A stretch of 64,000 nt of DNA. It comes from Amphiscolops sp. MND2022 (Eukaryota). The DNA is taken from NCBI GenBank assembly GCA_964187785.1, contig OZ076410.1, positions 80,848,001-80,912,000 on the forward strand, given 5' to 3'. Both the position numbers and the translations under genes were made by a program. The notes beneath the pieces are model-generated. The model did not search any database, had not been told where the DNA came from, and saw nothing but the letters and a program-made list of their open reading frames with translations. Below are positions 18,420 through 56,267 of the stretch, in pieces. Every line of letters begins with the position of its first letter. Within the stretch, counting starts at the first letter, position 1.

Positions 18420-18795
18420 ATGACAGCCTCTTCATCATTGTATTATATGTCCTTAGGTTCTCTCCTCATGGCTTCACTTGCACACGCTAGAAAATCTATC
18501 ACAGCATTTCAGTATACCCCTTTCGAATACCATGCCAATAAGCACCGTTTGGATTACCAGGATCGAATTTTGGCAACTCACTTCTACGGGAAAAGGCTTT
18601 TATGTGCTAAAAGTTGCAGCAGGAATGTTCAATGTCGATCCTTCAACTTCTGTGGAGGCAGAATTTGTCAGTTGCTGGCAACTGACGTCTTCTCAACTAT
18701 TTTGGGAACATCCGTGCTTCAGGAGGATGAAAATTGCGACCACTTTGGAATGCCGCGGAACTTCGAAACAGTCTGCAATGATATTCACAATAACG
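18420..18795 (+). CDS. Exon 1 of a secreted PAN/apple + C-type lectin protein (signal peptide + PAN domain)
   Basis: Hydrophobic leader (YYMSLGSLLMASLAHA) and PAN cysteine pattern LLCAKSCSRNVQCRSFNFCGGRICQL. Donor ACG|GTTGGT at 18796, phase 1. Confidence 0.8.
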
Positions 18796-19085
18796 GTTGG
18801 TCATTAACTATACAAACTTTTCAAAATGGAATCGAGCATTTCTCACTCTTTAAAAATGGGATTTTCAATTTGGTGACTTTCATAACTATGCTGAACAAGA
18901 GTAAAATTGAGATTTTTGGTTATTTTACTTTTGTTGTCGAAGACCAATTCAAATTTTTGTTTTGCGGAAACTTTGAGCTAAAAATGTTGAATTGAAGTTT
19001 CCACGATTGCTGAAATGTCAAAAAGTATGAGACTGCAACAGAATGGAGTACAGAAATTTACTTGAAATCTACTTATGGCGTTTAG

Positions 19086-19328
19086 ATGAAAAGCAATGCA
19101 CTAATCCCTCAACTTCATGCATGTGCAACGATGAAACTTTGGAAACATTCGTTTATAACGAAACAACAGAATCATTTGAATGGAAAATAGTTTCAAAGAA
19201 CGACGCAAGTTCAGCAGAAGAGCACTCAGGAGAAATGACAGAAGTTACAGCAACTACAGAACTGTGGATCAAGCTAGTCCAAAAACGCCTAACATGGACG
19301 CAGGCTAGAGAGAACTGTGCCGACCTAG
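19086..19328 (+). CDS. Exon 2 of the PAN-CTL gene (linker and start of the C-type lectin domain)
   Basis: Acceptor gcgtttAG at 19084-19085 restores the frame (NN-D-EKQC). Ends WIKLVQKRLTWTQARENCADL-G at donor CTAG|GTCAGG (19329), phase 1. Confidence 0.75.
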
Positions 19329-21479
19329 GTCAGGATTGCAAAGTTTTTTCTACAATACTACTCCGAAGATTGGGACCGAAGATTTGTAGTTTTTCCATTC
19401 AGAGTAAAATCTAAAATGGAGAAGCTTAGTGCCATGAACAGTGGAGAAAAATTGGAAAACATAAAAGTTGGGATATGAGTCAACGTTTGGACTGTTGCAA
19501 ATATCTAGACTTAGTCAAAGCTTGGCACTGCCAAAACGTCGTTGAAATCAAATGATACTGAAGCAAACGCCAGTACGCAGCGCAAAGAAAATAGGAAAAT
19601 GTACAGTATGACTAATTTTCCTATCATATCAAAGTAGTATACGAAATCTAGACCAGGCTCACAGCAATAGACCACCGACTATTCAAATCTTATTTATTTT
19701 AAAAGCAAAATTGCACCAAAAATCACGTGTTGTTGAACAAACAGTTCGTTTCTTCAAGGTTCTGAAAATCAGTGACTGAAACATAACACTGAAAATTTCC
19801 GAACTTGTCTGTCTATTCGTCGTTGAAATTAAATTTACTCACATGTTCAAAAATGAAAGAATGTCTTTGAACAAACAGTTCATTCCTCCAACTTTTAATG
19901 AGTTTCTACTAAACCGAACAAGCCTGCAACCGCCCAATTTGGCGCCCGCTCAAGTTACAACAAACCAAGTTTCTTGAAAATGCAAGGAATACTTTTGATG
20001 AAATTTTATTTTTACAGTGCCGAAAAATACCCGCCGAAAGTAGCACAATTTATTTTGGATATAACGTCAAGATTTTGGATATAGCGAGCCGGGACAAATG
20101 GGAGCGCTTTTTAGAAACCTTGGCCTGCTCCTTAGTTAAAGGCAATATAGTTCCAACATAACGTCAACAAATACGACACAGCTCAAATTTTCAAACCTGT
20201 ACCTCCTGTTTAGTGAAACTCAACCTACTTAGGATATACCGTCCAAAATTCGGATATCGCGTGTTGAGCCAATGCCGCCTGAGGAACGTCTGGTGGGGAT
20301 TCTACAAAAAGTGGACCATTCAATTTGAGTTTGTCATCCGAGAAAAAACTTTTCACTGAAGAGTTCGCATTTTCTGATTTTTTCAAACCAATTCAGCAAT
20401 GGTAACGTTACATCAAACAAAAGGAAGACACTGGATTTTGTTTCTAAATTAGTTAAATTCTGAATCACATGGATGGTTATTTTGGACAGTTCAGGTGTAT
20501 CAAAAAAACTGACGAAAAGCCATGATTATAGTCGCTCTTTTCTGAAGAAAAGTGCCGACTGAAAAGTGAAAAACAACTTATACAAAATGTTGAAGATCAA
20601 AGTCTTTCATAGTTTCTGATCAAACAATGAAAGCAAAAGGACTTTTCAAACACCCAGGTAACGCTGCTAAGAAACTACTCAACGAGCCAGGAAGAGTATC
20701 AAATACTGCCGTAATTTCTGGAACAGCAACGAATTCGAAAAATGAACGGTTGGTAGCTGCTTCAGGAAAGGTTTTCATCGAGGAATGACGTTTTATTTTC
20801 GAAAGCTTTCTTTAAAAATTTTTGTTCCATTAGGTGTATTTTGAAAAGTTTTAAAGCAAAACAGTTTTCACTTTTTGTAATCGTGGTGATTTGGAAAAAT
20901 TGAAAAATTGTAACAAAACTACTCATTTGAAAAAAGCGGAAAAATTTGAAGAGAAGTTTGGAAAGCACAATAAAAATGACATAGAAGAAGCATTTACACT
21001 ATCAACTGGAAATCAAAATACTTCGCAAACACTTTTGAAACTGTCTTAGAAAAACAAATGGAGGAATCTCGAAAACAGAAAAGGAATAGAAGAGGCAAGT
21101 ATAAACTACAGAGTAACCTTCGAACGTCCTTTGAAGATGTGACAAACTCAAAACATGAAGTATTCAATTTCTCAATGATTTTGTTCAAAGTAATGTTGAC
21201 TCTATGGTTGTTGTCCCAATCTTGTACACTGGCTTGGGAATCTACTGAAATCTCCCGGTTTAAACCTACATGACGGCTGAATTTGGAGTCTAACTTGCTG
21301 TGGTCCTGCTGGTCCTGTTGACCAAACCGTCCTAATGAGTTCCTGTCTAGTCTCGTGGACTTGTGGTCTGTCTGGTCAAGACAACCTCTGGGGCGTTTGT
21401 CTAACCTCCTCCACCTGTGGTCCACTTGACTAAATTGACCTCCAGGGTTCTAGTCTTGTCCACAGGACCGATGGTCCAT

Positions 21480-22064
21480 TTAGCCAGAGTAATCTCTGGG
21501 GCCCTCGTTTAGTCCCCTTGACCGGTGGTCCACTTGACCAGAGTGGTCTCTGGGGCCCTCATCTAGTCCCCCTGACCGGCGGTCCATATGGCTAGAATGG
21601 TCTTCAGGGCTCCTGTCTAGTCTACTGGACTGATGGTCCCTCGTGGTATTTAATCCCGATTTTTGAACTCCTAGCTCATTCTGAATACTGGAAAGCCCCT
21701 TTTCAGCAATTGCTGAATTTATAACTTCCAAAATAAGAGCATTCAAGTCTTCTCTACAATCGTCAAGTTTTCTAGTAACTTGGGTAGTGATTTCGTTGTG
21801 AATCATCCTCGCAGTCTCTATGGTAATTTTACTGTTTTCTCTACTGTTTGAATTAATCAGAAACCTAAAGTCCTCGCTTGTGGGATTAGCCGTTTGAAGT
21901 CCGTTGGACTCAAGGCCTCCTTCAATTTCTCTTTCACCTGACTGACAGTCTAGGTCATTTCTAGAGTAATTTCCCAACATTTCATCCATGTTTTCTAAGT
22001 CGGGCATCACGTCCGATTGTCTAGACCTTTTCTTCTTAGCCTTCTGTTTTTTTGTTGAGGGCAT
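21480..22064 (-). pseudogene. gag: Truncated gag N-terminal ORF with 18-aa repeats
   Basis: Collinear with ORF 42516-43040, which continues into capsid-like and then pol sequence in the long element. Confidence 0.75.
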
Positions 22065-22210
22065 TTGAAAAGTTTACTGCTCAAGAAAGATTGCATTTGA
22101 GCTTTTATTCGTGAACTAAATTTGAACTGAGAGAAAAAAGCAAAACAGAATGAGAACTTAGTAAATATATTGTGTCTACTGGTTTGTAGCGTCGTATTCA
22201 AAGTTGTGTC

Positions 22211-22229
22211 CTCCGGAATACGGGGACCA
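22211..22229 (-). promoter_or_regulatory. Putative primer-binding site (TGGTCCCCGTATTCCGGAG)
   Basis: TGG-initiated motif ~145 bp upstream of the gag ATG, conserved in four copies (also 26896-26914, 29328-29346, 43188-43206). Primer tRNA not identified. Confidence 0.6.
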
Positions 22230-23043
22230 GCTATTTATAACAATTGGTGCACTACTAGCAAAATTATGTTGATCATGTTTTTAAAAATAGTAACTAATTT
22301 GGGCTGACGCAACTTTACATCACTATTAGGTCATGTCTAAAAATAGCATCGGTTGGGCCCTGAAACTATAAATCGAATGAGGAGACTGGAAGGCGGTCTG
22401 CCTGTCAAGCTATATAGAAAACAATTTGAATGACAAGCACTTGTTTACTTAATACTCTATGTAAGAGTAATACAGCATGGCGGACTGGTAGTCATCTTGG
22501 CTAATAAATGTTAGCAAACACAGCATATTGGACTGGTGGTCCAAGAGGCTAGAGGACTCTAGCACGTGATTGGTCAATAATCATCAGGGACAGCGCGTCG
22601 AGTTGACTGGAGTAATTTTCACTTCGACCGCGTTTCTCTTATTGCATACTTGTTTAGATAGTTTTTGTTTAGAATATTAAACTGTAAGGCAACAACAATT
22701 CATTTCTTGATTACATTAACACTAATATGGACTACATGTCTAACAACAATAATCTAAAACAACATACATATAGAATAACAATTCAAGTCTAGGAAATTTA
22801 AGATAAATGGACCGACGGTCCCGCGTTTACAATGGTAGGACTCCGAATATGAAGGGCAAATTGCTGTCGTTAGGGGCTACTTGGTATCGATTACCGTCAC
22901 AGGCGGCAACCTGCGACACTCCCCAGGGGACGAGAATAATTGAGCACACCAGCATTCCTGCTTGGAAGGCATTTCTTCTTCGCGGTCGTGTGTGATAGGA
23001 CTCAGCGTCAATATAATGAGTGCTCCAAAAACTGAGTGTAATT

Positions 23044-26000
23044 ACACGTAGTGCATCGGGAAAACGTGCCAACCGTCAGACGTCAAAAGTGTTGAGCAAG
23101 AAGAAACATAGCCAGGAAACATGGAAGCGTTCGCAGCACGGAAAGAAAGAAGGAAACATGTTAATGAACAGAAATATGGATTTACAAAATGCAGATGTCG
23201 CTGCGAAGAAGCATTTACCATCTTGTAGCCGGAGATGAAAATAGAACAGCGCGATAACATTCAGAAAAAAACTGGAACATTCATCAGATAGCGAACAAGA
23301 TGGCAGAATCGAAGTAAAAAAATGGGTTAATATAAAACAGTTTTAAATCAGTCTATCAAAAATTTTCAATGAATTTGCAGTACGATGACGAATATATCAT
23401 GACAAGGGTAAAAGCTTTGTTTTCAAAATGGTGAAATTGCCAGTCTTTCATTCAAAGTCATTTTATCAGAACTTGATGAAATGCTTTTTTTTCAAAAACC
23501 AGAAAGACAACTCTGTGCATTTTTTTCATCGATCGAACAGAAGAAGTTCACTTATTTCTGGGCAATTGTTTAAAGCTATCTATCTACTGCATCAGTCTCC
23601 GGTTTTGGTCATCAATTATAGAGTTGTTTCGAGCAATATTATTGGCTTTTCACTGCAGTTTGAACTTAAAGTTTTGCTATTTTCGAAACCTGATCGATAG
23701 AAATAACAATTTTGTCTCCAAAATGTTCCATTTTGTGTTTGTCTGAAAAAACTGTTTGAGCACTGATTTTTGGGAAAGAACAATTCCTTGTAAAACTTTT
23801 ATCATTCAAAATAAAAAACCAGCCATATAAAAAGTTTCAGACTACAAATTGAGTTTCGACTTCAAGCAAAGGAAAAAATACCGACTATCACAATCGAAAA
23901 TGTTTACTCATTGATGAGTATCAAACAGTTAAAAAAATTAGAAAGCTTTTCATGAAAAGATTCTATCAGAAGGAAGCAAACCATCTGTAGTCAATTAATT
24001 TAAAATGCAAGATTGAACAAACGGGCGCAAAAGACAGAACGATATTTCCGAGTTTTTCAGAGGCTATAGACGTTCTTCTGTAATCTTTAACGAAGTTTGA
24101 AGATGAATTCAGCCTCTTTCTCATTGTATTATATGTCCTTAGGTTCTCTCCTCATGGTTTCACTTGCACACGCTAGAAAATCTATCACAGCAGTTCAGTA
24201 TACCCTTTTCGAATACCATGCCAATAAGCAGCGTTTGGATTACCAGGATTGAATTTTGGCATTTCACTCTACGGGAAAGGCTTTTATGTGCTAAAAGTTG
24301 CAGCAGGAATGTTCAATGTCAATCCTTCAACTTTTGTGGAGGCAGAATTTGTCAGTTGCTGGCAATTGACGTTTTCTCAACTATTTTGGGAACATCTGTG
24401 CTTCAGGAGGATAAAAATTGCGACCACTTTGGAATGCCGCGGAACTTCGAAAAAGTCTGCAATGATATTCACAATAACGGTTGGTCATTAACTATACAAA
24501 CTTTTCAAAATGGAATCGAGCATTTCTCACTCTTTAAAACATGGGATTTTTAATTTGGTGACTTTCTTAACTCTGCTGAACCAGAGTAAAATTGAGATTT
24601 TTGGTTATTTTATATTTGTTGTCGAAGACCAATTCAAATTTTTGTTTTGCGGAAACTTTGAGCAAAAATTGTTGAATTGATGTTTCCACGATTGCTCAAA
24701 TGTCAACAAGTATGAGACTGCAACAGAATGGAGTACAGAAATTTTGAAATCTACCTATGGCGTTTAGATGAAAAGCAATGCACTAATCCCTCAACTTCGT
24801 GCATGTGCAACGATGAAACTTTGGAAACATTCGTTTATAACGAAACAACAGAATCATTTGACTGGAATATAGTTTCAAAGAACGACGCTAGTTCAGCAGA
24901 AGAGCACTCAGGAGAAATGACAGAAGTTACAGCAACTGTGGATCAAGCTAGTCCAAAAACGCCTAACATGGACGCAGGCTAGAGAGAACTGTGCCGATCT
25001 AGGTCAGGATTGCAACGTTTTTTCTACAAAACAACTCTTTGGGACCGAAGATTTGTAGTTTTTCCATTCAGAGTAAAACCTAAAAGGGCGAAGCTTAGTG
25101 CCATGAACAGTGGAGAAAAGTTGGAAAACTTGAAGGTTGGGATATGAGTCAACGTTTGGACTGTTGCAAATATCTAGACTTAGTCAAAGCTTGCGATTGC
25201 CAAAACTTCGTTGAAATCAAATGATTTTGAAGCAAACGCCAGTACGCAGCGCAAAGAAAATAGTAAAAGGTACAGTATGACTAATTTTCCTATCATATCA
25301 AAGTAGTATACGAAATCTACACCAGGCTCACAGCAATAGACCACTGACTATTCAAATCTTATTTATTTTAAAAGCAAATTGCACCAAAAATTACGTGCTG
25401 TTGAACAAACACTTCGTTTCTTCAAGGTTCAGAAAATCAGTGACTGAAACATAACACTGAAAAATTCCCGAACTTGTCTGTCTATTCGTCGTTGAAATTA
25501 AAATTAATCACTTGTTCAAAAGAGAAAGAATGTCTTTGAACAAACAGTTCATTCCTCCAACTTTTAATGAATTTCTACTAAACTTAACTTGAACAAGCCT
25601 GCAATGGCCCATTTTGGCGCCCGCTCAAGTTACAACAAATCAAGTTTCTTGAAAATGCAAGGAATACTTTTGATGAAATTTTATTTTTACAGTGCCGAAA
25701 AATACCCGAAGGTAACACAATTTATTTTGGATATAACGTCAAGATTTTGGATATAGCGAGCCGAGACAAATGGCAGCGCTTTTAGAAACCTTGGCTTGCT
25801 CCTTAGTTAAAGGCAATATAGTTCCAATATAACGTCAACAAATACGACACAGCTCAAATTTTCAAACCTGTACCTCCTGTTTAGTGAAACTCAACCTACT
25901 TAGGATATACCGTCCAAAATTCGGATATCGCGTGTCGAGCCAATGCCGCCTGAGGAACGTCTGCTGGGGATTCTACAAAAAGTGGACCATTCAATTTGAG

Positions 26001-27730
26001 TTTGTCATCCGAGAAAAAACTTTTCAATCAAAGCAAAAGGACTTTTCAAACACCCAAGTAACGCTGCTAAGAAACTACTCAACGAGCCAGCAAGAGTATC
26101 AAATACTGCCGTAATTTGTGGAACAGCAACGAATTCGAAAAATGAACGGTTGGTAGCTGCTTCAGGAAAGGTTTTCATCGAGGAATGACGTTTTATTTTC
26201 GAAAGCTTTCGTTAAAAAAATTTATTCCATTAGGTGTATTTTGAAAAGTTTCAAAGCAAAACAGTTTTCACTTTTTGTAATCGTGGTGATTTGGAAAAAT
26301 TGAAAAATTGTAACAAAACTACTCATTTGAAAAAAGCGGGAAAATTTGAAGAGAAGTTTGGAAAGCACAATAAAAATGACATAGAAGAAGCATTTACACT
26401 ATCATCTGGAAATCAAAATACGAGCATTCAAGTCTTCTCTACTTTCGTCAAGTTTTCTAGTAACTTGGGTAGTGATTTCGTTGTGAATCATCCTCGCAGT
26501 CTCTATGGTAATTTTACTGTTTTCTCTACTGTTTGTATTAATCAGAAACCTAAAGTCCTCGCTTGTAGGATTAGACGTTTGAAGTCCGTTGAACTCAAGG
26601 CCTCCTTCAATTTCTCTTTCACCTGACTGACAGTCTAGGTCATTTCTAGAGTAATTTCCCAACATTTCATCCATATTTTCTAAGTCGGCCATCACGTCCG
26701 ATTGTCTAGACTACTTCTCCTTAGCCTTCCGATTTTTTGTTGAGGGCATTTGAAAAGTTCACTGCTCAAGAAAGATTATATTCGAGCTTTTATTCGTGAA
26801 CTAAGTTTGAACTGAGAGAAAAAAGCAAAACAGAATGAGAACTTAGTAAACAAATTGTGTCTACTGGTTTGTAGCGTCGTATTCAAAGTTGTGTCCTCCG
26901 GAATACGGGGACCAGCTATTTATAACAATTGGTGCACTACTAGCAAAATTATGTTGATCATGTTTTTAAAAATAGTAACTAATTTGGGCTGACGCAACTT
27001 TACATCACTATTAGGTCATGTCTAAAAATAGCATCGGTTGGGCCCTGAATCTATAAATCGAATGAGGCGACTGGAAGGCGGTCTTCCTGTCAAGCTATAT
27101 AGAAAACAATTTGAATGACAAGCACTTGTTTACTTAATACTTTATGTAAGAGTAATACAGCATGGCGGACTGGTAGTCCGCTTGACTAATAAATGTTAGC
27201 AAACACAGCATATTGGACTGGTGGTCCAAGCGGCTACAGGACTCTAGCACGTGATTAGACAATAATCATCAGGGACAGCGCGTCGAGTTGACTGGGGTAA
27301 TTTTCACTTCGACCGCGTTTCTTTTATTGCATACTTGTTCAGTTAGTTTTTGTTTAGAATATTAAACTGTAAGGCAACAACAGTTCGTTTCTTGATTACA
27401 TTAACACTAAAATGGACTACATGTCTAACAACAATAATCTAAAACAACATACATATAGAATAATAATTCAAGTCTAGGAAGTTTAAGATAAAAAGACCGA
27501 CGGTCCTGCGTTTACAATCGTAGGACTCCGGATATGAAGGGTAGAGTGCTGTCGTTAGAGGCTACTTGGTATCGTTTACCGTCACAAGCGGCAGCCTGAG
27601 ACACTCCCCAGGGGACGAGAATAATTAAGCACACCAGCATTCCTGCTTGGAAGGCATTTCTTCTTCGCAGTCGTGTGTGGTAGGACTCAGCGTCAATAAA
27701 ATGTCTGCTCCAAAACACTGAGTGGAATTA
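23044..27730. repeat. Tandem segmental duplication, copy 2, with two internal deletions
   Basis: About 95% identical by eye to 17365-23043. Lacks ~270 bp (equivalent to ~20355-20625) and ~715 bp (equivalent to 21021-21735). Confidence 0.92.
24103..25002 (+). pseudogene. Pseudogenised duplicate of PAN-CTL exons 1-2
   Basis: CGA>TGA stop at 24250-24252 and a frameshift right after it. An 8 nt deletion (acagaact) near 24935 shifts exon 2. Splice sites are retained (acceptor 24766-24767, donor 25003). Confidence 0.85.
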
Positions 27731-28662
27731 TTTTATCGTATTGAATGACCTTCCACACACATAGCAATCCCCATGTTCTACTAGATTTGGTTCGCCACAT
27801 GTGTTGCTGGTCCTCACAGCTACTCCCGTTATGTGGGCATTGTCAGGCCAATAGGGGAACTGGTCATCTGACCATGGGTTGTTGATTTACTGATATTTGG
27901 GCCTTGTTAACCTGTTTCATGTATAGGTGGTGACTGGGGCCTATCGGAAATAGGTTCCAATTGGCTGCATTGGGCAATTGGTTGTTGACTAAGCGGCATA
28001 AAGTTTAAAGCGAGGGGCCCTGACCTGAGACTAGATCAATCAAATTACTAGGCAGATAATTTCCTTCTGAGGACCAAGGGCCATACAGGACTTCAGGGAT
28101 GGACAAATCAAACATCCTTATGGTTCGGTTGTCATGAATAACTCAACTACTGTTTGTGGCTCAAAAAGCTGTGTCTTCCTGTAACAATCCAGTACCTCTA
28201 TGTCCTGTCCCGGTCACCTTCGTCCCCAGATGTTTGGGATGGGTCATCAACAGCCATCCTTTCATTCGACGATAGGTAACTTAGACTAACAATTGGTTGA
28301 ATGAAATCATCAACAGTGAACTGGAGAGCCATTTCCAATTTGTATTTTTCCAGAGGCAGTTTTTTGGCAATTGTTGAAAGTATTCGTGATTAACTGATTT
28401 GTAATTCGAAACGAGAGTTAATGAAAGTTTCAGTCAAAAAGGCTTCAGGTCGAAATTCATAAATTTCGCAGGAGATCCCGGTGGGAGTTTTACCCGCGAA
28501 TTCTTCCGACTTCCCTTTGTCTTTCCCATTTAGGCAAGTTTCCTTCTTGCCACGCATTTTGATGGAGCGTCGCTTCTCTAGTTGATAAATCCTTGAGGAC
28601 GCTTCAAGTATTCACCTTCATTGCTAGAGAGATGTTGATAACCAGGCAGAGTGTTTATCATC
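26420..28662 (-). mobile_element. Ty3/Gypsy 5' fragment, copy B, with ~1.1 kb of upstream accessory ORF
   Basis: Gag start 26402-26750, PBS 26896-26914, LTR-like region to ~27480, decayed ORF 27500-28560. Confidence 0.85.
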
Positions 28663-30959: not shown

Positions 30960-31959
30960 ATTAGTTCTTGGTCAACAAAAATCTTCACAGACTGGCGGTA
31001 CGCGTGGCTACTACTGACCAGCCAATCAGGTTTTGCCTAAGTATGGAGAAGATAATTCTGAATGAAATAGTGAAAGATGAAGGAAATTTGTGAAATTTTG
31101 AAAATTTGGGTCGCTATTGAGTGAAATAGCGCAATAACACGACAGGGAAAATCAATTAGGCTGTGTACTTCACTTCCTGTTTCGGTAACACAAAATAAGT
31201 GTGATAATTGTTTAATAAAATTCATTGTAAAAAAGTAATACATGAAAACTTGTTATTGATGCGGATTAAGCAACGACATCCATTGGGACTTAAGTAAATG
31301 TGCGTCTCAGAGATGAAATGCAATCTGTGTGTAGTACAGTCTACTGTACCAGTGGTCTAATTACACTTAACTTAACCTACCATCGATTGAGTTTGAGTCA
31401 ACTGTAACTGAGTAGAAAGTTATGTAAACCAGTGATCAGCAGTCGTTTGAATCGCACTTGTATTCCTATCAACTTTTGAATTGATTTGTGATCACATTAC
31501 TGGACATTTAGTTCTTCCTGTTTAATAATTTCCTGCCATCAAAGTGTTAACCCTACCCTCTTTTTGACTAAACAATTCTTGCTAGATGCGAAATAACTAT
31601 TGCACCGGACAGCACCCTACTGTGCAGCAAGTGCACTTTTCTTTTCGTCCTCACAAGCTGCCGTCCTTCAACGCGGTTATAAATCTAGCAATCAATTGAA
31701 ATTGGCAGTTCATTAGCAGTTTCCCGGGGTATCAATTCTGGTCTTACGTCATAGAGATCCCATCAGTGTGGTTCTTTAAGTTGTTAAAAGTAAGCTTGAT
31801 CAGGGCTCTCTATTATCGAAGTACTTCCTCCATCGTGAAATGAAAACACGTCGCAGGAACGTGTTGCATATAACTTACTTCCGGAAGCTTTCTGGAGCGG
31901 CGAGATGGATCAATTTGCAGGAAGTGAACAACGATTATTCAAATCTTTTCGTTTAGATA

Positions 31960-43040: not shown

Positions 43041-43187
43041 TGCTCAAGAAGGATTATATTTGACCTTTTATTCGTGAACTAAATTTGAACTGAGGGAACA
43101 CAAAACAGAAAGAGAATTTAGTAAAAATTAACAAACGGGCAACAAATTGTGTCTTTTGGTTTGTTGCGTCGTATTCAAAGTTGTGTC

Positions 43188-43206
43188 CTCGGTACTACGG
43201 GGACCA
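43188..43206 (-). promoter_or_regulatory. Putative primer-binding site of the long Gypsy element
   Basis: TGGTCCCCGTAGTACCGAG, at the same position as in copies A-C. Confidence 0.55.
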
Positions 43207-46200: not shown

Positions 46201-46228
46201 TCTAGTAGAACAATGAAATTCGATATTA

Positions 46229-47893
46229 AGTGTGGAATTTTTAATCCTTTGGCGTTTTAGAAAAATCCCATCATTTTTGCGCGAAGCACAGATTATATAT
46301 CCAACTAAATTTCAGACACTCCACATTGCGTACGTCGGTAAAAACAGCTGAAAAGGCGAATTTAGCGTATTTCGTTAAAGATTTTGTCAAACGGAATATA
46401 GAAAGAGTAAATTTGATTGTTTGAGTAAGATAGAATTGACGTCAATAACGAAATTGTCCAAATTAGCTAAGTTAGAATCGACCGCTTCGAGCAAATTTTG
46501 CTGAGTTTTTACTTTGGACGGAAACAGAGATCTGAGGGAAAAAACACCACCCCCCTTTTTTTTGTCCGAAGGACTTGTCCGATCGAGCTGAAATTTGGCA
46601 TGCATGAACTAGAGGTGTTAACTCAACTTTCGACTCGGAGTACTCGACCTCGTACCCCCCCAGTCCCGGGCAACTGAAATGAAATGCTTCTAAATGGAAA
46701 TAAAGAAACCTAAGAAGAAATAACCGGAAGTGACCTAGGTCGACCCCCTACGAACTCGCCGGCTAAGCACGGAATAGATCGTATTATATATGGAATTGAT
46801 AGCCCACATGATCTTAAGCCGTTTGCGCACATTTTCGGAAATCCACGACGCGTGTAGGAGGAGTACGGACCCTAAGTAAATAAACCTCGAATGTTATGTA
46901 AATAGCCAACGGACGACCCGAAGATCATGAAACTTACCCAAGACATTCACCTAGCGACCCTAAGTAATATACATGACAGATACATTGACCGACCCTCCAC
47001 GCGCGGAGTAATGTTTGTTTAAGACCCGCGGGACCGGACGCACGGGCCCGACCGATAAAAAACATTTGACCTTGGCTTTTAATACCTCAAACGAACCGGA
47101 ATGATGAATGTAGCAGATTTTCAACGTGAAGGAAACCGTATTTGTAACCCATTCGGGGGTGACCGCCTTAAGTAAACAAACGATACGCACATCATGTAAC
47201 TCGGGAACTGTTGACCCTAGAATGATATATCTTGGCATATAGCAACTTTGGCTGACGAAAATTATCTTCAAGGTCATGGAAGGACCTCAAGGTCATTTAG
47301 GATGCAACCCCGGTACATATAGGAAAACGTACAAAAAAACTTGTAAACCAGCGTCTTTAGCGATATTTTTTGCGTTTCAGTCAGGCGGAACGATTCGCAA
47401 CGTATTGCACCTAGGATGGATGATAGAAAAGTACCCCTTGAACGTAGAGAACATGTAAACCATGTAGTTGAAGGTCATTGAGCAATTTCTTCGATATTAA
47501 AAATATCTCGGGTGACTTGAATTATTATTGAAATGTGGACTTCGGACAAGACCTGAATTACTTGTTGTTGGAGGCAAGGAATGTTTAGACGAAGAATAAC
47601 CAGTGGCATTCGTCTTGATATAAAAGGAAATTGTAAACATGAAGGTAAACTCATGCAAATTTAAGACGCCGACGCCCTGTATGTAACGAAAATGTCAAGT
47701 ATGATAGAAAGTGAAGATGAAACCACCCAGAACACGCGCGATGAACAAATATAATTGAGGCGGATTGGAGTATAATCGAATAGACACCACCGAGTTAGAG
47801 AGCGACAAGCAAGTTGAGCCTCGAGACGGGGGCAAGAAACTTGGCTTCGCTGTAAGAACTGGTTTGTCGTTAGCTCTAGAGATCGAACTCGAA
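46229..47893. repeat. ~1.65 kb direct repeat, copy 1 (flank plus first ~210 bp of an LTR)
   Basis: Collinear with 51555-53169 from agtgtggaattttt to gatcgaactcgaa, roughly 93-95% identical by eye. Confidence 0.92.
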
Positions 47894-48184
47894 CAAGTCC
47901 GGGACTTGTGTTTTGCACTGCTACGCAGTTGGCTGAATCGTGAAAACTTGTTGTTTAGTGATTATTGTTAAAGAATCGATCTGACTTTCTTTATAAAAAG
48001 TAATTCGACGAATACTTCAGTTTTCTTAGTCAATTCAAGAGAGCCGAGAAACTTGAGCACGTAGAGACTTTTTGAAGAGAATTGCACGCTTATAGAACGA
48101 AACTTACTCACCAAAATTAAACCTTTCTGTTAAGAGTTGAGCCTTGGGTTTTCTCTCCGACCCCAGTAGCAAAAATTTCTTACA
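47682..48184 (+). mobile_element. 5' LTR (503 bp) of a gag-only Gypsy-like element
   Basis: TGTAA...TTACA termini, followed after 1 nt by a PBS and then gag. Confidence 0.8.
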
Positions 48185-48185
48185 G

Positions 48186-48203
48186 TGGCGCTCCTGGGTG
48201 GGC
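48186..48203 (+). promoter_or_regulatory. Primer-binding site complementary to a tRNA-Asn(GUU) 3' end
   Basis: TGGCGCTCCTGGGTGGGC; metazoan tRNA-Asn ends ...GCCCACCCAGG(G/A)(A/G)CG-CCA. Confidence 0.8.
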
Positions 48204-48262
48204 AATTTTCGTAATTTGTTATCGTGTTACATCTTCTTGTTACTTGGAGCTTACTGTGACTT

Positions 48263-49203
48263 GTGGATTGGGAGATGAATCCAAATAAGAAACGAGACTT
48301 GTTAGAAGTGACATTGCAGGCCATTGGACAAGTGCTGGACGATCAGCAGAACCGCATGTTGAGCAACGGCGCTGCTAGACCGGACCGATTTCCATCTGAT
48401 GCCTTCCCAAACTGGGTTCAAAGGAAATTGTATTTCGCAGCGGTGGCAGAAGCGAACAGGTGGACGGATATTCAAGCCATCAACGCTCTTCCAGTTTGTT
48501 TGAATGGGCATGCGCTAGATGAGTTCGTTGCCACACCGACTCAGTTGAAACAGCCTGTCAACGGAGAACCAGAACCCACGTTGCGGTCACTCTTCGAACA
48601 TCTAGATAGAGTGTTGGGGGTTCTGCGAAACGACCGTTTCGGAAGAGGTGAATTCGAAGCACTGGCGCAGAAACAAGGCGAAAGTCTCCGAGAAATTGCA
48701 CGCAGAGTCCGAGGTACCGGAACGTTAGTGCACGCCAACATGGAAGCAGACCAACAAGATGAACAGTTTACGGAACGTTTCATTGAAAGGTTAGCTGACC
48801 CTGACTTACTGAAGGTTCTACTTCGGGAGCACACCGGGACCTTCACGGAAATTGTGAATAGAGCGATCGACCTGGAGACGATATAAAATCCAACCGGAAA
48901 CGATCTAGCAAGCGTGTAGATACAATCAGAGTGACTCACGATGCGGCTACAGTGAACAGCAATCCTGAAATGGACGAGATGAAAACGCAATTGAATGGAA
49001 TGAAAGTTGCCATGAACAGTCTAACGGAGATGATGACCCAATTCATCAGCGCGATGGTCCCAGGGAGTTCAACTGATGTTCAGAGACTAAGAGAGCCACC
49101 TCGATGTTACGCGTGCGGGATAGAAGGACACCCGGGAAAAGTTTGTCAACAGAGAGGGAATACTTTAAACTTGCGAGGGCCGGGAGACCGTCACAGAAGT
49201 TAG
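48263..49203 (+). pseudogene. gag: gag (capsid + CCHC zinc knuckle) with one 1 nt frameshift at ~48884
   Basis: Capsid-like YFAAVAEANRW..LPVCLNGHALDEF..LAQKQGESLREIARRVR..ERFIERL. Knuckle CYACGIEGHPGKVC fits CX2CX4HX4C. Confidence 0.88.
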
Positions 49204-49214
49204 ATCTTCCGGTC
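49164..49214 (+). promoter_or_regulatory. -1 programmed ribosomal frameshift signal (T TTA AAC plus stem-loop)
   Basis: Heptamer 49164-49170 is in gag phase (TTA AAC = L N). 7 nt spacer, then a 10 bp stem 49178-49187/49205-49214 with two G-U pairs. The -1 frame stays open to 50069. Confidence 0.8.
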
Positions 49215-50069
49215 GAATCACACGGCACCCTCTCACAGCAGCAAGCCGAAGGAACGGCTGCGGCGCGACGATTGAAGAACAAATCTCTGACTGCTGAGGT
49301 CGAAATAGCAGGCCGCCACGGAAATGCCAACGACCAGTATCGTGACGAACAGATGAACGTGGAAAGAGTAGGGGTTGCGCGTGAAACGTCGTCACCGAGA
49401 AGCAGCTTTACTCGGCAACCTGGCACACTTACGTCGCAAGTGGATCAATTCTGCACGATAGGAGAGGTGATAACGACACGAAGTCATGACTTCGACCCTG
49501 AGTTGGAGGCTGTATTGCTCCCGGACAACTTCTCTCGCAAGATAACGACTACTGCCAGTACAAGAGACACCCGAGCACCAGCGGGACCTGATGCCTCAGC
49601 CGTGGGAGTCAATGCAGAAGGGAAGTATGCGGCCCAGTTTGCTGTGATGACGGGTACTCTATTGACGAACGACTTTGAAGAGCTTGTTCGGAGTCGAGAG
49701 AGCATTGTTGAAGAAACAAACTGGGAACAAGAGCAGGTGACAGAAGTGATGGTCGTCGAAAACCAACGCCAGAGACTGATGGAGGAGCGTTGGATTCCAG
49801 CAACTGTCGCAGTGAAAGACGTAGACGGTGCAATGCTAGATGAGATTTTGAGAGACATCGAAGAGTTTGATGAATCATATAAACTGTCCGACGAAGACGA
49901 AACAATCATTGACGCTCTATTGGACGAACTGGAACTTGAAAACGCAGGCCAAGATGGAGGCGAACGGTCTGAAATTCTCGACGTGGAAGGAGTCCCTGTA
50001 CCCTGCACTGGCGTGTATAAAGTGTCAGTTAAATGTACTTGTGATGTCACCAAGGTAACTGTCAGATGA
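49165..50069 (+). CDS. -1 frame ORF (~300 aa), acidic and low complexity, no recognisable PR/RT/RH/IN motifs
   Basis: Part of ORF 49104-50069, with a D/E-rich C-terminal half (DEILRDIEEFDESYKLSDEDETIIDALLDELELE). No D(T/S)G or YxDD. Confidence 0.5.
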
Positions 50070-51554
50070 GACGGACATCGAAGCAGAAGGGAAGTGCTCC
50101 TTCCAGAGTACCGAAGTGGATTGCAGTCATGAGCGACACTACTGCCAGATCCCAGAGGAAGCTACCCCCCAACGCCCAACTCCCACCCAAAGAAGGCGAT
50201 TCTGGGTACCCCACAGGAAGCATTGTAGGCGCTAAACAGAAAATCATCAGATGGGCTTGCGTGGGCTGTGCTGGCCGACCCACCGAAAGCATGCCAGCCA
50301 GGTGGAAACCCGACAAAATGGTGATGCCCCGCTGCCAATGCAACCGAGACCGGATGGGACCCGACGCTGGAGCAGCCGAAGGAAGAGATCAAGGTGGAAG
50401 TCTGTAAATCGATGCAGTGTCCGACGAGGCGATACGATGCTGCCATGTATGTGAAACTCCACTTACCAAACACTTAAGTATCAATTTCGCAAAAACTGAT
50501 TTTTAATCATTAAGTTTTTAAATTATTTATTTTCGTGAAGTCAGTATACTTCTTGTTGTCCAGGCAAATTAAGGTTCCGCCGACCGCAGTTTTTTTGCAA
50601 GGCGATGAAATTGAATGTAGTTTTTTTATGAGTACCATTTTAGAGGCAGAACTTCGAGGAGTCAAATTTTTGTGTTTATATTCTTTTCAATGTAAAAAAA
50701 CCGAACCCAGACCCCCTATCTCGCAACCCCTACCCTAGTGCTACTCTCCTAGTTGTTTTGTTAGACGCGATAACTAGCCTCAATGAATCCAAACTTATCC
50801 TCGAACATATAAATAAGGACCCGTAGGACTACCCACTTGCGCATTGTCAAAAAGAAAGTTGGTATAAATTATTTTTACTGGGTTAAAAAGGGATGAAACA
50901 ATAAATGATTAAATTTGGATGAAAACGATCGTTTTTGTCCAAGTGAATTCAGAATAATATGTCCGGGGGCGACGTCTTTTTGAAGGCTCTTTGAAGCGTT
51001 CGTCGGGCCAATCGGAGTCGAAACGTCTGACCCTTGACCCTGTCCCCCGGAATAGGAAGACTCAGCAGAAAAAGGGTAAATGCGACTCAGCCAGGCGACA
51101 TATATTCTAGAAAGAGCTTCTCCCCTCCTTCCAATAATATTCTTATGTAGTAACCTCCGTCGACACTCATGTTCATTCGAACCCCCCTGGTGCATCAATG
51201 AACGGAAATTAGCTCGAGAAAAAAAATGTTTTTTTTTCGAGGACGAGTTGTTCAATATGATTCACTTAGTTTCTTTCTCTGATAGTCTCTGTTTATATGG
51301 TATTTGAAGCTTGACACCCCTTCATAACTAATGGCGCAATAAACTTTAACGATGTTCGATATTTTTTTATTTATTATCTTTGAAGTCATTCTCTATACTA
51401 GTTTTTCTTTATTGTAGATAAATATCCTGCGGAGCTATGGTTTCTTTGACCAACCGTCCTCCTCCCCATTATATATGTGTAACCTAGATCCCACAATTCA
51501 GCCAACGACAATACCGCTAAGTTTATTCGGGAGAATAAAAGTCCAAAAGGGAAG

Positions 51555-53169
51555 AGTGTGGAATTTTTGAACCTTTGGCGTTTTAGAAAATTCCCATCAT
51601 TTTTGCGCGAAGCACAGATTATATATCCAACTAAATTTCAGACACTCCACATTGCGTAAGTCGGTAAAAACAGCTGAAAAGGCGAATTTAGCGTATTTCG
51701 TTAAAGATTCTGGCAAACGGAATATAGAAAGAGTAAATTTGATTGTTTGAGTAAGATAGAATTGACGTCAATAACGAAATTGTCCAAATTAGCTAAGTTA
51801 GAATCGACCGCTTCGAGCAAATTTTGCTGAGTTTTTACTTTGGACGGAAACAGAGATCTGAGGGAAAAAACACCACCCCCCTTTTTTTGCGAAGGACTTG
51901 TCCGATCGAGCTGAAATTTGGCATGCATAAACTAAAAGTGTTAACTCAACTTTCGACTCGGAGTACCCGACCTCGTACCTCCCCCCAGACCCGGGCAATT
52001 AGCATCGGAAGTGACCTAGGTTGACCCCCCTACGAACTCGCCGGCTAAGCACGGAACAAGTCGTATTATATATGGAATTGATAGCCCACATGATCTTAAG
52101 CCGTTTGCGCACATTTTCGGAAATCCACGACGCGTGTAGGAGGAGTACGGACCCTAAGTAAATAAACCTCGAATGTTATGTAAATAGCCAACGGACGACC
52201 CGAAGATCATGAAACTTACCCAAAATGTTCACCTAGCGACCCTAAGTAATATACATGACAGATACATTGACCGACCCTCCACGCGCGGAGTAATGTTCGT
52301 TTAAGACCCGCGGGACCGGACGCACGGGCCCGACCGATAAAAAACATTTGACCTTGGCTTGTAATACCTCAAACGAACCGGAATGATGAATGTAGCAGAT
52401 TTTCAACGTGAAGGAAACCGTATTTGTAACCCATTCGGGGGTGACGGCCTTAAGTAAACAAACGATACGCACATCATGTACCTCGGGAACTGTTGACCCT
52501 AGAGTGATAAAACTTGGCATATAGCAACTTTGGATGACGACAATTATCTTCAAGGTCATGGAAGGACCTCAAGGTCATTTAGGATGCAACCCCGGTACAT
52601 ATAGGAAAACGTACAATAAAACTTGTAAATCAGCGTCTTTAGCGACTTTTTTTGCGTTTCAGTCAGGCGGAACGATTCGCAACGTATTGCACCTAGGATG
52701 GATGATAGAAAAGTACCCCTTACACGTAGAGAACATGTAAACCATGTAGTTGAAGGTCATTGTGCAATTTCTGCGATATTAAAAATATCTCGGGTGACTT
52801 GAATTATTGTTGAAATGTGGACTTCGGACAAGACGTGAATAACTTGTCGTTGGCGGCAAGGAATGTTTAGACGAAGAATAACCAGTGGCGTTCGCCTTGC
52901 CATAAAAGGAATAGTAAACATGAAGGTAAACTCATGCAAATTTAAGACGCCGACGCCCTGTATGTAACGAATATGTCAAGTATGATAGAAAGTGAAGGTA
53001 TAAACCACCCAGAACACGCGCGATGAACAAATATAATTGAGGCGGATTGGAATATAATCGAATAGACACAACCGAGTTAGAGAGCGACAAGCAAGTTGAG
53101 CCTCGAGACGGGGGCAAGAAACTTGGCTTCGCTGTAAGAACTGGTTTGTCTCTAGAGATCGAACTCGAA
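51555..53169. repeat. ~1.6 kb direct repeat, copy 2, ending in a truncated LTR (52963-53169)
   Basis: See copy 1. TGTAACGAA at 52963 follows the same flank (gacgccctgta) as at 47682. Confidence 0.9.
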
Positions 53170-53339
53170 TTCTTAGGAAACTGTTTTTTGGCCGTAAAGC
53201 CTCTGTTACAGCTATTTTTGAATGGCTCTGAGTCAAACGTGTGATCTGCTATGTTGCAATAAGTGTTTGGATATGTTGGAACCACGTTAATTCGAGTGTA
53301 TTTGTAACAACCTAGAGGTAATTAGTCAGAATGATGATC

Positions 53340-54760
53340 TACTAGCATTTTTGTTTCCTCTCTAGTGTCACTTTGGTGGTTTCCTTTTTGAACAATTTTC
53401 CTTCCGTTTCAGTTGCGTCTCTAATTTTGCTTGTTATTTCTTTTTTCCAAGTTTCTGATTCTCCTTTGTCGGGTATTGAGTAAGTGTTCACGTCCAGCGT
53501 ACTTTCATAGTCAAAAACTCGAATGGTCTCTACTTTCACTGCTGTTTCTGAAAGGAATGAAAATGATTTCAACAACGGTGACGCATGGTTCACGCAACTA
53601 TGAATTTCGAAACCTGAATTTTAGACGCTGGACTGAATTGATATGAATCAGTAGGATTTTTGATTTAACAAATCCGGATTTATTGATTCTTAGGAATGTT
53701 TAGGTAAGGAACAAATGATCATAGAAAGGTTTAACATGTTGGTTCTATAAATATAATCAGTTACTAATAGGAATTGCTACACTGTTTACACCGTTGTTAA
53801 AACGATTTTCTATTGAAAATTCAAGTTCCTTCAACTTCCTCGTGTCAACTTAGAAACGAAAACTAGAAATGAGAAGTCGAAAAGTTGTAGAAAAACTTGT
53901 CTCTGGGGAATTGGAGACATATGTAACTGAGAATATAACTACGGAATTTCCAATTGCTGGCACTAGCAAATCTCTGAATCTTCAACCAAGAAACTTAGAC
54001 GAACTTAGAACTTCACTTAGACAGGAAATCATGTCCGAGCTAACAATAACACACTAGCTGAGAACCAGAAAAAGATGCTGAAACCTATAGCTCCAAATGC
54101 AAAGAAAACACCAGACCCTCAGAACTTAGAAGATTCTGTTTCCGAAGCTGAAATTTCCTTCATTGCCCCAACATTAACCCTATTAGATCTAAAACGCATA
54201 CTCAAAATAACACTGCGCTAGTAATTCGTAACAGATAGAACTGAGCTAGCGATGAAGGATTTGCTTATGGACTGACATTGGTGAGTTGAGAGTGATTCGA
54301 ACCTGATACCGCCCCAGTACAGGCCGAACGATCTAACCACTAGGCCATGCTCCCCTTTAGTTTCATCGAATCGTCCAGAGTAATTGTTTCTTATATCTAT
54401 TTCTTCGACTGATAAATTAACTGTTTCAATGTTAACTGCCAAATCATTCAAGTAACCAAAATTAAACAAAATTGTTTTGTCTCTTCAAATCTTCCGGTAA
54501 TCAAGACTCTAGATCAATCAAGCCTGCATGCAATCAATACCTGTTTCTTGATTAACTGCTTCTCGCAGAACACGATTCCTGTTTATTTACCAAAATCGTT
54601 TTGCTGTGGCTGAAAAAACGCAAAAAGTTAAAATATGTTGAATGCACCAATGACCAAAACCCGTGAATACTCCGAAAAGTTCTGAAAGAATTGTTTACTG
54701 CAATTATTGTCGAAAATGTTAAATCTTTCCTTTGGAGCATACCGCAAAAATGCAACTCTC
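53340..54760 (-). pseudogene. Probable decayed PAN-domain paralog interrupted by a gag-like fragment
   Basis: Minus frame NRVLREAVNQETGIDCMQA*LI*SLDYRKI*RDKTILFNF, with TGA codons where PAN cysteines are expected. A linker-like piece is at 53342-53593. Confidence 0.35.
53869..54230 (+). pseudogene. N-terminal gag-like coiled-coil fragment of another LTR family
   Basis: NLDELRTSLRQEIMSELT..(L)AENQKKMLKPIAP helical motif, frameshifted. Assignment from recalled similarity only. Confidence 0.3.
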
Positions 54761-55290
54761 CACATGTCTGACGTTCGTGTCTGTCTAAGAAAAAATAAAA
54801 TTATTGACTAGTAGTCTTGCGACTTTAGTTCACAAAAAGCGCCGACTAAAATCTAAACGCTAAATACTTTTTGTAGATTTAGGTCGAAAACTTTGGGAAA
54901 GCTTGTCTAATGGTTCATAAACTCGGAAAGATGAAAGAAAATATTCTGCTGCTTAGATGGAATTATCTGTTTAATACACTCATAATTGTTACTATTTTTG
55001 CGCTTATACAACTCGTAGAAAGTAAGTTTTATTAACCGTTTTGTAGAAGTGAAATGCTGCCAACTTTAACTCACCAATCACAAACACTTTCCAAGAAACT
55101 AGTAATTATAAAGAACCTTGTCATCTATTACCCAAGGTACATCTTGTTGCGAATTCAGCCCCCAACACGAAAACACATTTTTTCTTGAATAAAAATGTTT
55201 CACTAATAAGAGAATATTAAATGAATGTAAACAATTAAAGGGTTGTCTCTACAACTGTTTTGACACTTCAGGCATAAAAAATGCCTAATT

Positions 55291-55621
55291 AGTCGGCGCT
55301 TTTCGTAGAAAACGCAGACTGTAGTAGTGACTTTTCTTTTTTTAAGACCAACGAAGTGACCGATTTTACAAGCTTTATAAGCTGACTTGAACTAACACTA
55401 AATGCCACACTACTTCTACTGGCACTTGAGATAGAGGTTAATTAGGCTTTTTTGAGGTTCCCTTTTACATTTTTCGGCACTATGCGACTTCCCGGGGACC
55501 AAAAAAAACTTTTAAAAATCGATTTTTTTTCAATTTTTTCTTTATGCGGGTACTGTAGAAGAGAATACTTGACACTTTGAAGTCCTTTTGCTATTTTTGA
55601 GCCTTAGCTATGGCGCCGACT
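55291..55621. mobile_element. Short (~330 bp) MITE of the AGTCGGCGC family
   Basis: AGTCGGCGC at 55291 and GGCGCCGACT ending 55621. The right end is the reverse complement of 3105-3175. Confidence 0.6.
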
Positions 55622-55956
55622 TGAGCCGTTCCCGGCTTGTTTTTTAATATTATTGTCCAAAATAGCAGAAATCCACGTTTTGAACAAGCTAAAATCGTAT
55701 AAACTGGCCTTTATTTCAACGCAAATTTTCTCCGTGATAAAATCTAATGAGCAACTTTTTACTGACAGTCAATGTAATGGATAGGATTATGTCGACATCA
55801 ATTGTTTTATTGGACAAAATTCTAACGCAAACGATGTCGACATAATGGTATTTGAACCTTGTGTCTTATCCCCCCCGCCGCCGCAGTTTGGGGGGATAAA
55901 TGACATGGTCCATTATAAACATTAGCACAATTCCCATTAACGTAATCCTGACACAG

Positions 55957-56267
55957 GCGGTGAATTGTTTGCCAAAACAATGGATGGAACTCAGCAACAG
56001 CTTGAAAAGTTCCTAAACAAGATGGGAGATCGAAGTCATTGGACTGGGGTTAACACAGAAGACCACGTAGATTGGAGAGCCCCAGATGGTGAAATTCTTC
56101 ATGGTACCTCTTTTTTCTGGGCACCATATCAACCCGATAACTATGGAGGTGTTCAGTTATGCGTAGCTCTTAATGACCATGGGAGATTTCTGAATGACAA
56201 AGTTTGTGGCATCAAATCTCCATCTATTTGCGATATGATGCCAGCACTATCAATGCTCGAAGAATGA
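55957..56267 (+). CDS. Terminal exon encoding most of a C-type lectin domain (QPD type); predicted exon 3 of the PAN-CTL gene
   Basis: Acceptor cctgacacAG at 55955-55956, phase 1. GGELF..HWTG..WAPYQPDNYGGVQLCV..LNDKVC..SICD supplies the three cysteines missing from exon 2. Confidence 0.82.

What the first reader, a model, noticed from the sequence alone, without database searches (positions are those of the whole stretch)
18420..56267. A PAN/apple + C-type lectin gene appears split by a 36.6 kb transposon-filled intron
The ORF track shows three unrelated pieces. Joining 18420-18795, 19086-19328 and 55957-56267 at GT-AG sites (both introns phase 1) gives exactly 930 nt: a 309 aa signal peptide-PAN-linker-CTL protein. 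The junction reads WTQARENCADL-G-GELFAKTMDG, which supplies the first CTL cysteine that the distal exon lacks and completes a four-Cys QPD-type lectin. QPD is the established galactose-type motif. The predicted intron 19329-55956 holds almost all of the retroelement and duplication structure in the window. The splice model is inference from frame and motif fit.
Basis: partly seen in the sequence, partly recalled or inferred. Interest (0 to 1): 0.8.

Follow-up and report, generated by a model that had tools for sequence, protein, structure and literature searches.

The report
Lectin gene with one very long intron
Three separated coding pieces are the exons of one secreted PAN/apple + C-type lectin gene whose second intron has swollen to 36.6 kb with mobile elements and a broken copy of the gene's own first two exons; the gene model holds, but a long repeat-rich intron is ordinary in a 1 Gb animal genome.

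Summary
The arithmetic is right. Pieces 18420-18795, 19086-19328 and 55957-56267 join at GT-AG sites, both phase 1, into 930 nt and 309 aa without a stop.

The join is well supported as a structure:
- This 1.07 Gb genome holds more than 130 paralogs. Many are single-exon signal peptide-PAN-linker-CTLD genes of about 305-330 aa.
- A profile built from ten of them aligns the joined protein as one domain (217.5 bits, E 1e-68) across both junctions.
- No other C-terminal lectin half lies in the window, and there is no close copy elsewhere in the genome.
- Two paralogs have an intron at exactly the same codon and phase, but only 0.3 and 1.5 kb long.
- A second haplotype from an ENA assembly is collinear. 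It keeps all three exons and splice sites, with a 32.7 kb intron.

Any transcript that includes it ends early.

No RNA data exist here, so splicing is inferred, not shown. dN/dS between the haplotypes is about 0.8, so current constraint is unproven.

Verdict: a correct gene model, a new member of a known kind, and low interest.

The parts
18420..18795 (+). Exon 1: start codon, signal peptide (predicted cleavage after AHA, residue 23) and the PAN/apple domain
   Evidence: Pfam PAN_1 at 23.3 bits. Paralog profile positions 35-134. There is a stop five codons upstream of the ATG.
18796..19085 (+). Intron 1: 290 nt, GT-AG, phase 1
   Evidence: It is unique in the genome apart from copy B, so it is not a repeated 'introner'. 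Paralog L034 has a phase-1 intron three codons away.
19086..19328 (+). Exon 2: Cys-rich linker and the first ~25 residues of the C-type lectin domain, including its first Cys (C203)
   Evidence: Paralog profile positions 166-226. Family similarity stops exactly at the GT donor.
19329..55956 (+). Intron 2: 36,628 nt, GT-AG, phase 1, at a position shared with paralogs
   Evidence: The same site and phase occur in L034 (309 nt) and L017 (1,489 nt). The intron is 32,692 nt in the second haplotype.
55957..56267 (+). Exon 3: the rest of the lectin domain (HWTGV, QPD at 56130-56138, ND, C275/C290/C298) and the stop codon
   Evidence: Pfam Lectin_C profile positions 24-106/107 at 29.6 bits. Closest solved domain is the aggrecan CTLD. 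Residue positions.
56419..56440 (+). Two AATAAA polyadenylation signals about 150-170 nt after the stop
   Evidence: Motif match only.
23044..27730 (+). Tandem duplicate (copy B) of 17362-23044, about 95% identical, lying inside intron 2
   Evidence: Self-BLAST. It is absent from the second haplotype.
24103..24479 (+). Pseudo-exon 1B: 6-nt insertion after the start, CGA>TGA nonsense at codon 50, 2-nt deletion; the GT donor is intact
   Evidence: Alignment. Translation.
24768..25002 (+). Pseudo-exon 2B: 8-nt deletion (235 nt instead of 243), with AG acceptor and GT donor intact. It is a possible decoy or poison exon
   Evidence: Every isoform that includes it stops early.
36797..41980 (-). Dispersed retroelement of about 5 kb, with a reverse-transcriptase fragment at 38306-38965
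   Evidence: Over 10,000 first-look candidates, with copies on all chromosomes at 71-73% identity. Pfam RVT_1.
46229..53169 (+). LTR-type element with ~1.6 kb direct terminal repeats (46229-47893 and 51555-53169, 96%)
55289..55644 (.). 355-nt high-copy short element (SINE- or MITE-like), 310 nt upstream of the exon 3 acceptor
   Evidence: Over 10,000 first-look candidates at 91-95% identity.
28663..43912 (.). Probable large old element bounded by ~1.2-1.7 kb direct repeats (28663-29852 and 42165-43912, 82%). It carries the repeated ORF at 32346-33101. Further copies of the repeat unit lie at 21212-22916 and 26414-27598
   Evidence: Both ORF families occur in thousands of copies, and the terminal one occurs in pairs about 14.5 kb apart elsewhere. 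The outline is inferred.

Best explanation
The three pieces are the exons of one gene. It encodes a 309-aa secreted protein: signal peptide, PAN/apple domain, Cys-rich linker, then a canonical four-cysteine C-type lectin domain with a QPD (galactose-type) motif.

The gene is a divergent member of a very large family specific to this lineage, with more than 130 copies in this genome. The animal is probably a mollusc. Most family members are intronless, but a few carry an intron at the same codon inside the lectin domain.

In this gene that old intron grew from a few hundred or thousand bases to 36.6 kb. The growth came from nested retroelement, LTR and short-element insertions, plus a 5.7 kb tandem duplication that copied the promoter and exons 1-2 into the intron. 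The copy has since decayed.

The only transcript with a full reading frame is exon 1 - exon 2 - exon 3. It would give a soluble lectin that most likely acts as a calcium-dependent galactose- or GalNAc-type recognition protein, as in other invertebrate lectin expansions.

Shown: exon boundaries, collinearity with paralogs, the shared intron position, and conservation in a second haplotype.
Inferred: that the long intron is actually spliced today (my odds are about 0.65), the sugar specificity, and the immune role.
For: - The join arithmetic and splice sites hold.
- Pfam finds PAN_1 on exon 1 and a Lectin_C match on exon 3 that starts at profile position 24.
- Intronless paralogs are collinear with the joined protein along its whole length.
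- The paralog profile hits the joined protein as one domain: 217.5 bits, E 1e-68, profile positions 36-322.
- In paralog L004, Pfam Lectin_C spans the position equivalent to the junction.
- Only exons 1A, 2A, 1B, 2B and 3 are family pieces in the window. The genome holds no close second copy of exon 3.
- The best-scoring canonical join is 19328|55957, and L017 and L034 share that site and phase (sequences).
- ENA contig ctg177662 is collinear over window 17222-56671. Its three exons and all four splice sites are intact, and its intron 2 is 32,692 nt.
- Copy A has no disabling change, while copy B has three.
- The closest solved domains are the aggrecan, mannose-receptor and SP-D CTLDs.
Against: - There is no RNA evidence at all. 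No RNA run holds the exons, and the runs that do hold them are DNA.
- No transcript-derived full-length protein is in the protein database.
- dN/dS between the two haplotypes is 0.79, from 16 differences. Exon and flanking non-coding substitution rates are alike. Purifying selection is therefore not demonstrated, though the power is low.
- The exon 2B acceptor is intact and lies 5.4 kb from the exon 2A donor, far nearer than exon 3. It could capture splicing and yield a truncated frame.
- The polypyrimidine tract before 55957 is weak.
Confidence: 0.75

Rival explanations
1. The locus is a dying gene. The exons are still open, but intron bloat and the decoy copy of exons 1-2 mean that little or no productive mRNA is made, so it is effectively a young pseudogene.
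For: - dN/dS is about 0.8, and exon and non-coding rates are equal.
- The intact exon 2B acceptor and donor sit inside the intron, and every isoform containing a B exon ends early.
- The other haplotype carries a 5.86 kb Ty3-type LTR retrotransposon in intron 1.
- The gene sits on a long branch within the family.
Against: - Both haplotypes keep 930 nt open and all splice sites intact, while copy B collected a nonsense codon and two frameshifts over a comparable period.
- High dN/dS is usual for recognition lectins.
- Introns of 30-40 kb are spliced routinely in animals (general knowledge).
Confidence: 0.2
2. Exon 2 is the last coding exon. The transcript reads through the donor to the stop at 19414 and gives a PAN-only protein. 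Exon 3 is an orphan relic.
For: ORF 19043-19414 is open past the donor.
Against: - Family similarity ends exactly at the GT at 19329 and resumes exactly at 55957.
- The read-through tail matches nothing.
- Exon 3 stays open and keeps its acceptor in both haplotypes.
- Paralogs split at the same codon.
Confidence: 0.04
3. The tandem copy B is an assembly artefact: two haplotypes placed one behind the other. If so, the true intron is about 31 kb and B is simply a null allele.
For: - The second haplotype contig has a single copy.
- A and B differ by about 5%, within the 2-9% range seen between haplotypes here.
Against: - The window has no N or gap, and the junction at 23044 is clean.
- In the three-way comparison A and the ENA haplotype are sisters and B is the outgroup, so B is not simply that other allele.
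- The depth data here cannot decide.
Confidence: 0.1

Closest known systems
Mollusc 'Lectin C-type/PAN domain-containing' proteins (automatically named ESM Atlas clusters; Pfam PF00024 + PF00059)
   Same: Same two-domain order and similar size. The nearest Atlas clusters to paralog L004 are of this kind and are mostly from Mollusca. In paralogs of this genome Pfam finds PAN_1 and Lectin_C together.
   Different: The Atlas scores are 0.89, a lead rather than a proof. The window gene is a divergent member, at most 48% identical to any paralog over exon 3. It keeps all four lectin cysteines and QPD, whereas the ten intronless paralogs aligned lack the inner cysteine pair and mostly carry QPN in place of QPD.
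Vertebrate lectican (aggrecan) and mannose-receptor-family C-type lectin domains
   Same: Best solved-structure match for exon 3 is aggrecan CTLD 1tdq_B (E 2e-4), aligning through QPDN, the C-V strand, ND and the final Cys.
   Different: The similarity is at domain level only, about 30% identity. The surrounding architecture differs: there is no EGF, Sushi or fibronectin module, and a PAN domain stands in front instead.
Expanded bivalve C-type lectin repertoires (PMC10140915)
   Same: A large lineage-specific expansion of secreted lectins, some with extra domains in architectures unique to the group. Most are uncharacterised and are presumed to act in immune recognition.
   Different: A term search of that paper's main text (the supplements were not searched) found no mention of a PAN or apple domain. 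The organism here is unnamed and its phylum is only a lead.

Membership tests
C-type lectin-like domain (Pfam PF00059) | Match to the Lectin_C profile above the gathering score | tested here: met
   Exon 3 alone scores 29.6 bits against a cut-off of 22.6, at profile positions 24-106/107. The missing N-terminal positions are supplied by the tail of exon 2, as shown by collinearity with paralogs in which Lectin_C is continuous. The joined sequence itself could not be sent to Pfam, because no reference exists for a spliced product.
C-type lectin-like domain (Pfam PF00059) | Four conserved cysteines (C1-C4 and C2-C3 disulfides) and a WIGL-type core motif | tested here: met
   C203, C275, C290 and C298 are present. 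HWTGV stands in place of WIGL. The disulfide pairing is inferred from the canonical fold.
Calcium-dependent galactose-type C-type lectins | QPD tripeptide plus the downstream Glu and WND residues of calcium site 2 | tested here: inconclusive
   QPD is at 265-267 and N-D-x-x-C at 286-290. However, Leu replaces the Trp of WND, and Gln stands where the Glu before C2 normally is. Binding was not tested.
PAN/apple domain (Pfam PF00024) | Match to PAN_1 above the gathering score, with the conserved cysteine core | tested here: met
   23.3 bits against a cut-off of 21.4, at residues 61-109. The match is marginal but agrees with the paralogs. Cysteines lie at 62, 66, 72, 78, 83, 106 and 119.
This genome's PAN-CTLD paralog family | Full-length collinear match to a profile of the family | tested here: met
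   One domain, 217.5 bits, E 1e-68, profile positions 36-322.
Spliceosomal intron (for 19329-55956) | Canonical GT-AG ends that restore the frame | tested here: met
   This is the best of all canonical joins.
Spliceosomal intron (for 19329-55956) | Position and phase shared with homologous genes | tested here: met
   L034 reads ATAG|gt...cacag|GT (309 nt). L017 reads CCTAG|gc...ttag|GT (1,489 nt, GC donor). Both are phase 1 at the same Gly codon.
Spliceosomal intron (for 19329-55956) | Removal seen in RNA | not testable with these tools
   No RNA run was found. The runs that were laid are genomic DNA.

The most novel reading that the evidence does not exclude
The decayed tandem copy of exons 1-2 inside the intron keeps an intact acceptor and donor. 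It might act as a poison exon or decoy promoter that throttles output of this lectin. Because the copy is missing from another haplotype of the same species, this would be a structural polymorphism that tunes or silences an immune-type gene. Separately, the family shows introns at many different positions beside many intronless members, which could record recent intron gain or loss.
Probability: 0.1. Interest if true: 0.45.

Novelty: new member of a known kind. Interest (0 to 1): 0.2.

Why it matters
For annotation, a gene caller that caps intron length, or that reads the ORF track alone, would miss this gene or report fragments. The joined model recovers a complete lectin. The locus also shows how one conserved intron can range from 0.3 kb to 36.6 kb among paralogs, and how repeat insertions and segmental duplication differ between haplotypes of one species. 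Beyond that it is an ordinary animal gene. Nothing in it challenges current knowledge.

Tried and rejected
- **RNA evidence.** Two run searches found only DNA runs of one study. Laying four of them showed contigs running straight through intron 1. No conclusion on expression is possible.
- **Annotated or transcript-derived full-length protein.** A search using exon 1 inside a 191-aa frame found only a 136-aa genomic call from the ENA assembly.
- **'Introner' origin of intron 1.** Rejected: its 290 nt are unique in the genome apart from copy B.
- **Tree of exon-3-equivalent segments.** I built it to see whether the three genes sharing the intron form a clade. It was unresolved: the window gene sits on a long branch in a polytomy.
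- **Selection test.** dN/dS is 0.79 from 16 differences, and the three-way branch counts show exon and non-coding rates alike. The test is too weak to decide.
- **Paralog L022.** It looked as if it shared the intron site, but no canonical donor fits there and the match contains stop codons. I dropped it as evidence.
- **Pfam on ten large ORFs in the intron.** Only one RVT_1 fragment was found. The repeat nature of the others was shown by copy number instead.
- **The joined protein** was not sent to Pfam, structure prediction or the large databases, because a spliced product has no reference and I did not type long sequences.
Full report
**The observation.** The window was read at the stated coordinates, and the three segments were joined by script.
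- Segment lengths are 376 + 243 + 311 = 930 nt.
- The donors are GT at 18796 and 19329. The acceptors are AG ending at 19085 and 55956. Both introns are phase 1.
- The product is 309 aa followed by a stop. An in-frame stop lies five codons upstream of the ATG at 18420, and the N-terminus looks like a signal peptide.
- Pfam finds PAN_1 on exon 1 and nothing on exon 2.
- Pfam finds Lectin_C on exon 3, but only from profile position 24 onward. Exon 3 is therefore a lectin domain without its first ~23 positions.
- The tail of exon 2 has the form expected of those positions, including the first conserved cysteine (C203). C275, C290 and C298 and the QPD motif (residues 265-267) lie in exon 3.

**Do the pieces belong together?** A search of the window's own genome (1.07 Gb; the window is C2:80848001-80912000) with exon 3 gave 132 matches. 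All are at most 48% identical apart from the exon itself, so there is no second close copy of exon 3.

Many matches lie in open frames of 300-350 aa. Translating ten of them showed single-exon genes with the same layout: signal peptide, PAN domain, Cys-containing linker, lectin domain. The joined protein aligns with them from end to end, and both junctions fall where the paralogs are continuous.

Further tests agree:
- A profile built from the ten paralogs hits the joined protein as one domain of 217.5 bits (E 1e-68, profile positions 36-322).
- In paralog L004, Pfam Lectin_C covers residues 194-283, which spans the position equivalent to the junction.
- A six-frame scan of the whole window with that profile finds only five family pieces: exon 1, exon 2, their duplicates, and exon 3. 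The profile coordinates fit together: 35-134, 166-226 and 224-322.
- Enumerating all GT/GC-AG joins near the two homology ends, 19328|55957 scores best, at 132.4 bits against 123.4 for the runner-up.

**Is it an intron or a disruption?** Some family members do have introns. Two of them are split at exactly the same Gly codon and in the same phase:
- L034 (C6, about 19.09 Mb) reads ...ATAG|gt...cacag|GT..., with an intron of 309 nt.
- L017 (C5, about 27.34 Mb) reads ...CCTAG|gc...ttag|GT..., with an intron of 1,489 nt and a GC donor.

L034 has the same three-exon plan, and its first intron lies three codons from the window's intron 1, in the same phase. The gap at 19329-55956 therefore sits at an old, shared intron position, not at a random break. 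A tree of the C-terminal segments could not resolve whether these three genes form a clade. Intron 1 is unique sequence and not a repeated element.

**What the intron contains.**
- Self-comparison shows that 17362-23044 is repeated in tandem at 23044-27730 at about 95% identity. This places a second copy of the promoter region and of exons 1-2 inside intron 2.
- That copy has a 6-nt insertion after the start, a CGA>TGA nonsense codon at codon 50, a 2-nt deletion in exon 1B (24103-24479) and an 8-nt deletion in exon 2B (24768-25002). Its splice sites are intact.
- Every isoform that contains a B exon stops early. Only exon 1A-2A-3 is open.
- The rest of the intron holds:
  - a ~5 kb dispersed retroelement at 36797-41980 with a reverse-transcriptase fragment;
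  - an LTR-type element at 46229-53169 with 1.6 kb terminal repeats;
  - a 355-nt element in thousands of copies at 55289-55644;
  - ORFs belonging to families with thousands of copies.

'Transposon-filled' is fair. 'Almost all of the window's repeat structure' is not, because an inverted duplication at 5-13 kb and an LTR element at 57.3-62.7 kb lie outside the intron.

**A second haplotype.** The protein search with exon 1 found one ENA genomic call at 98% identity. I walked its 57.5 kb contig (ERZ25074608, ctg177662) for 45.5 kb.
- It is collinear with window 17222-56671 at 91-98% identity.
- It lacks copy B.
- It carries a 5.86 kb Ty3-type LTR retrotransposon in intron 1.
- Its intron 2 is 32,692 nt.
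- All three exons are open and the four splice sites are identical.

Diagnostic variants of this haplotype appear in DNA run X2, from a second sample with the same organism label, and another paralog is 100% identical in that assembly. It is therefore the same species. The long intron predates the split of these haplotypes.

**Constraint.**
- The two haplotypes differ at 16 coding sites, 12 of them non-synonymous, giving dN/dS of 0.79.
- In a three-way comparison, copy A has 5 and the ENA haplotype 4 private substitutions in 622 exon columns. These rates are close to those in the flanking non-coding DNA.
- Copy B has 21 substitutions plus two frameshifting deletions.
- Copy A is clearly better preserved than copy B, but purifying selection on A is not demonstrated.

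**Expression.** No RNA run holds either exon set. The four runs that were laid are genomic, since their contigs run through intron 1. Splicing is therefore inferred from structure alone. The intact exon 2B acceptor, 5.4 kb downstream of the exon 2A donor, is a plausible competitor for splicing. This is an inference, not an observation.

**Comparison with what is known.**
- The nearest ESM Atlas clusters to a paralog are mollusc proteins named for Lectin_C plus PAN (a lead only).
- The closest solved domains to exon 3 are the aggrecan, mannose-receptor-family and surfactant protein D lectin domains.
- Large lectin expansions with lineage-specific domain combinations are described for bivalves (PMC10140915).
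- QPD as a galactose-type motif is established knowledge. Here Leu replaces the Trp of WND, and Gln stands at the usual Glu before C2, so the specificity remains a prediction.

**Verdict.** The finding is a new member of a known kind, and a long repeat-rich intron is ordinary in an animal genome of this size. The small points of interest are the 100-fold range in size of one conserved intron among paralogs, the decayed exon copies nested in the intron, and the structural differences between haplotypes.

Noticed in passing
G000 C1:9.9-10.4 Mb, C7:7.40-7.57 Mb, C11:25.3-25.8 Mb, C5:17.7-18.0 Mb and others (loci L002-L011): There is a very large family (at least 132 matches) of PAN + C-type lectin genes, often in tandem clusters. 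Many are single-exon ORFs of 305-330 aa. The ten aligned lack the inner cysteine pair, and most carry QPN rather than QPD.
   Followed up: partly
Loci L017-L036: Family members that do have introns carry them at many different positions (profile positions about 134, 153, 190-216, 224 and 232-240) and in different phases. This could reflect intron gain or loss, or pseudogenes. The models are rough.
   Followed up: partly
L016:1569-7425 (ENA contig ctg177662): The second haplotype has a 5.86 kb Ty3-type LTR retrotransposon in intron 1, on the minus strand, with long ORFs for RT, RNase H and integrase. It is absent from the window, so it is an insertion polymorphism.
   Followed up: partly
L017 (C5:27340000-27349999, minus strand), donor at oriented position 7311: The paralog that shares the intron site has GC instead of GT at the donor. 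It is either a GC-AG intron or a mutated donor.
   Followed up: no
window 4969-8405 and 9507-12940: An inverted duplication of 3.4 kb at 93.7% identity lies upstream of the gene, with tandem sub-repeats around 3.3-5.4 kb and 12.5-13.5 kb.
   Followed up: no
window 57285-58030 and 61986-62731: Direct repeats of 746 nt at 99.6% identity bound a 5.4 kb element just downstream of the gene. Collinearity with the second haplotype ends at 56671, so the element may be absent there.
   Followed up: no
window 21480-22061 (-) and homologues, e.g. C11:40807925 / 40822489: This ORF family occurs genome-wide in pairs about 14.5 kb apart that flank homologues of the ORF at 32346-33101. This suggests a large element with long terminal repeats. 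Neither ORF has a Pfam match.
   Followed up: partly
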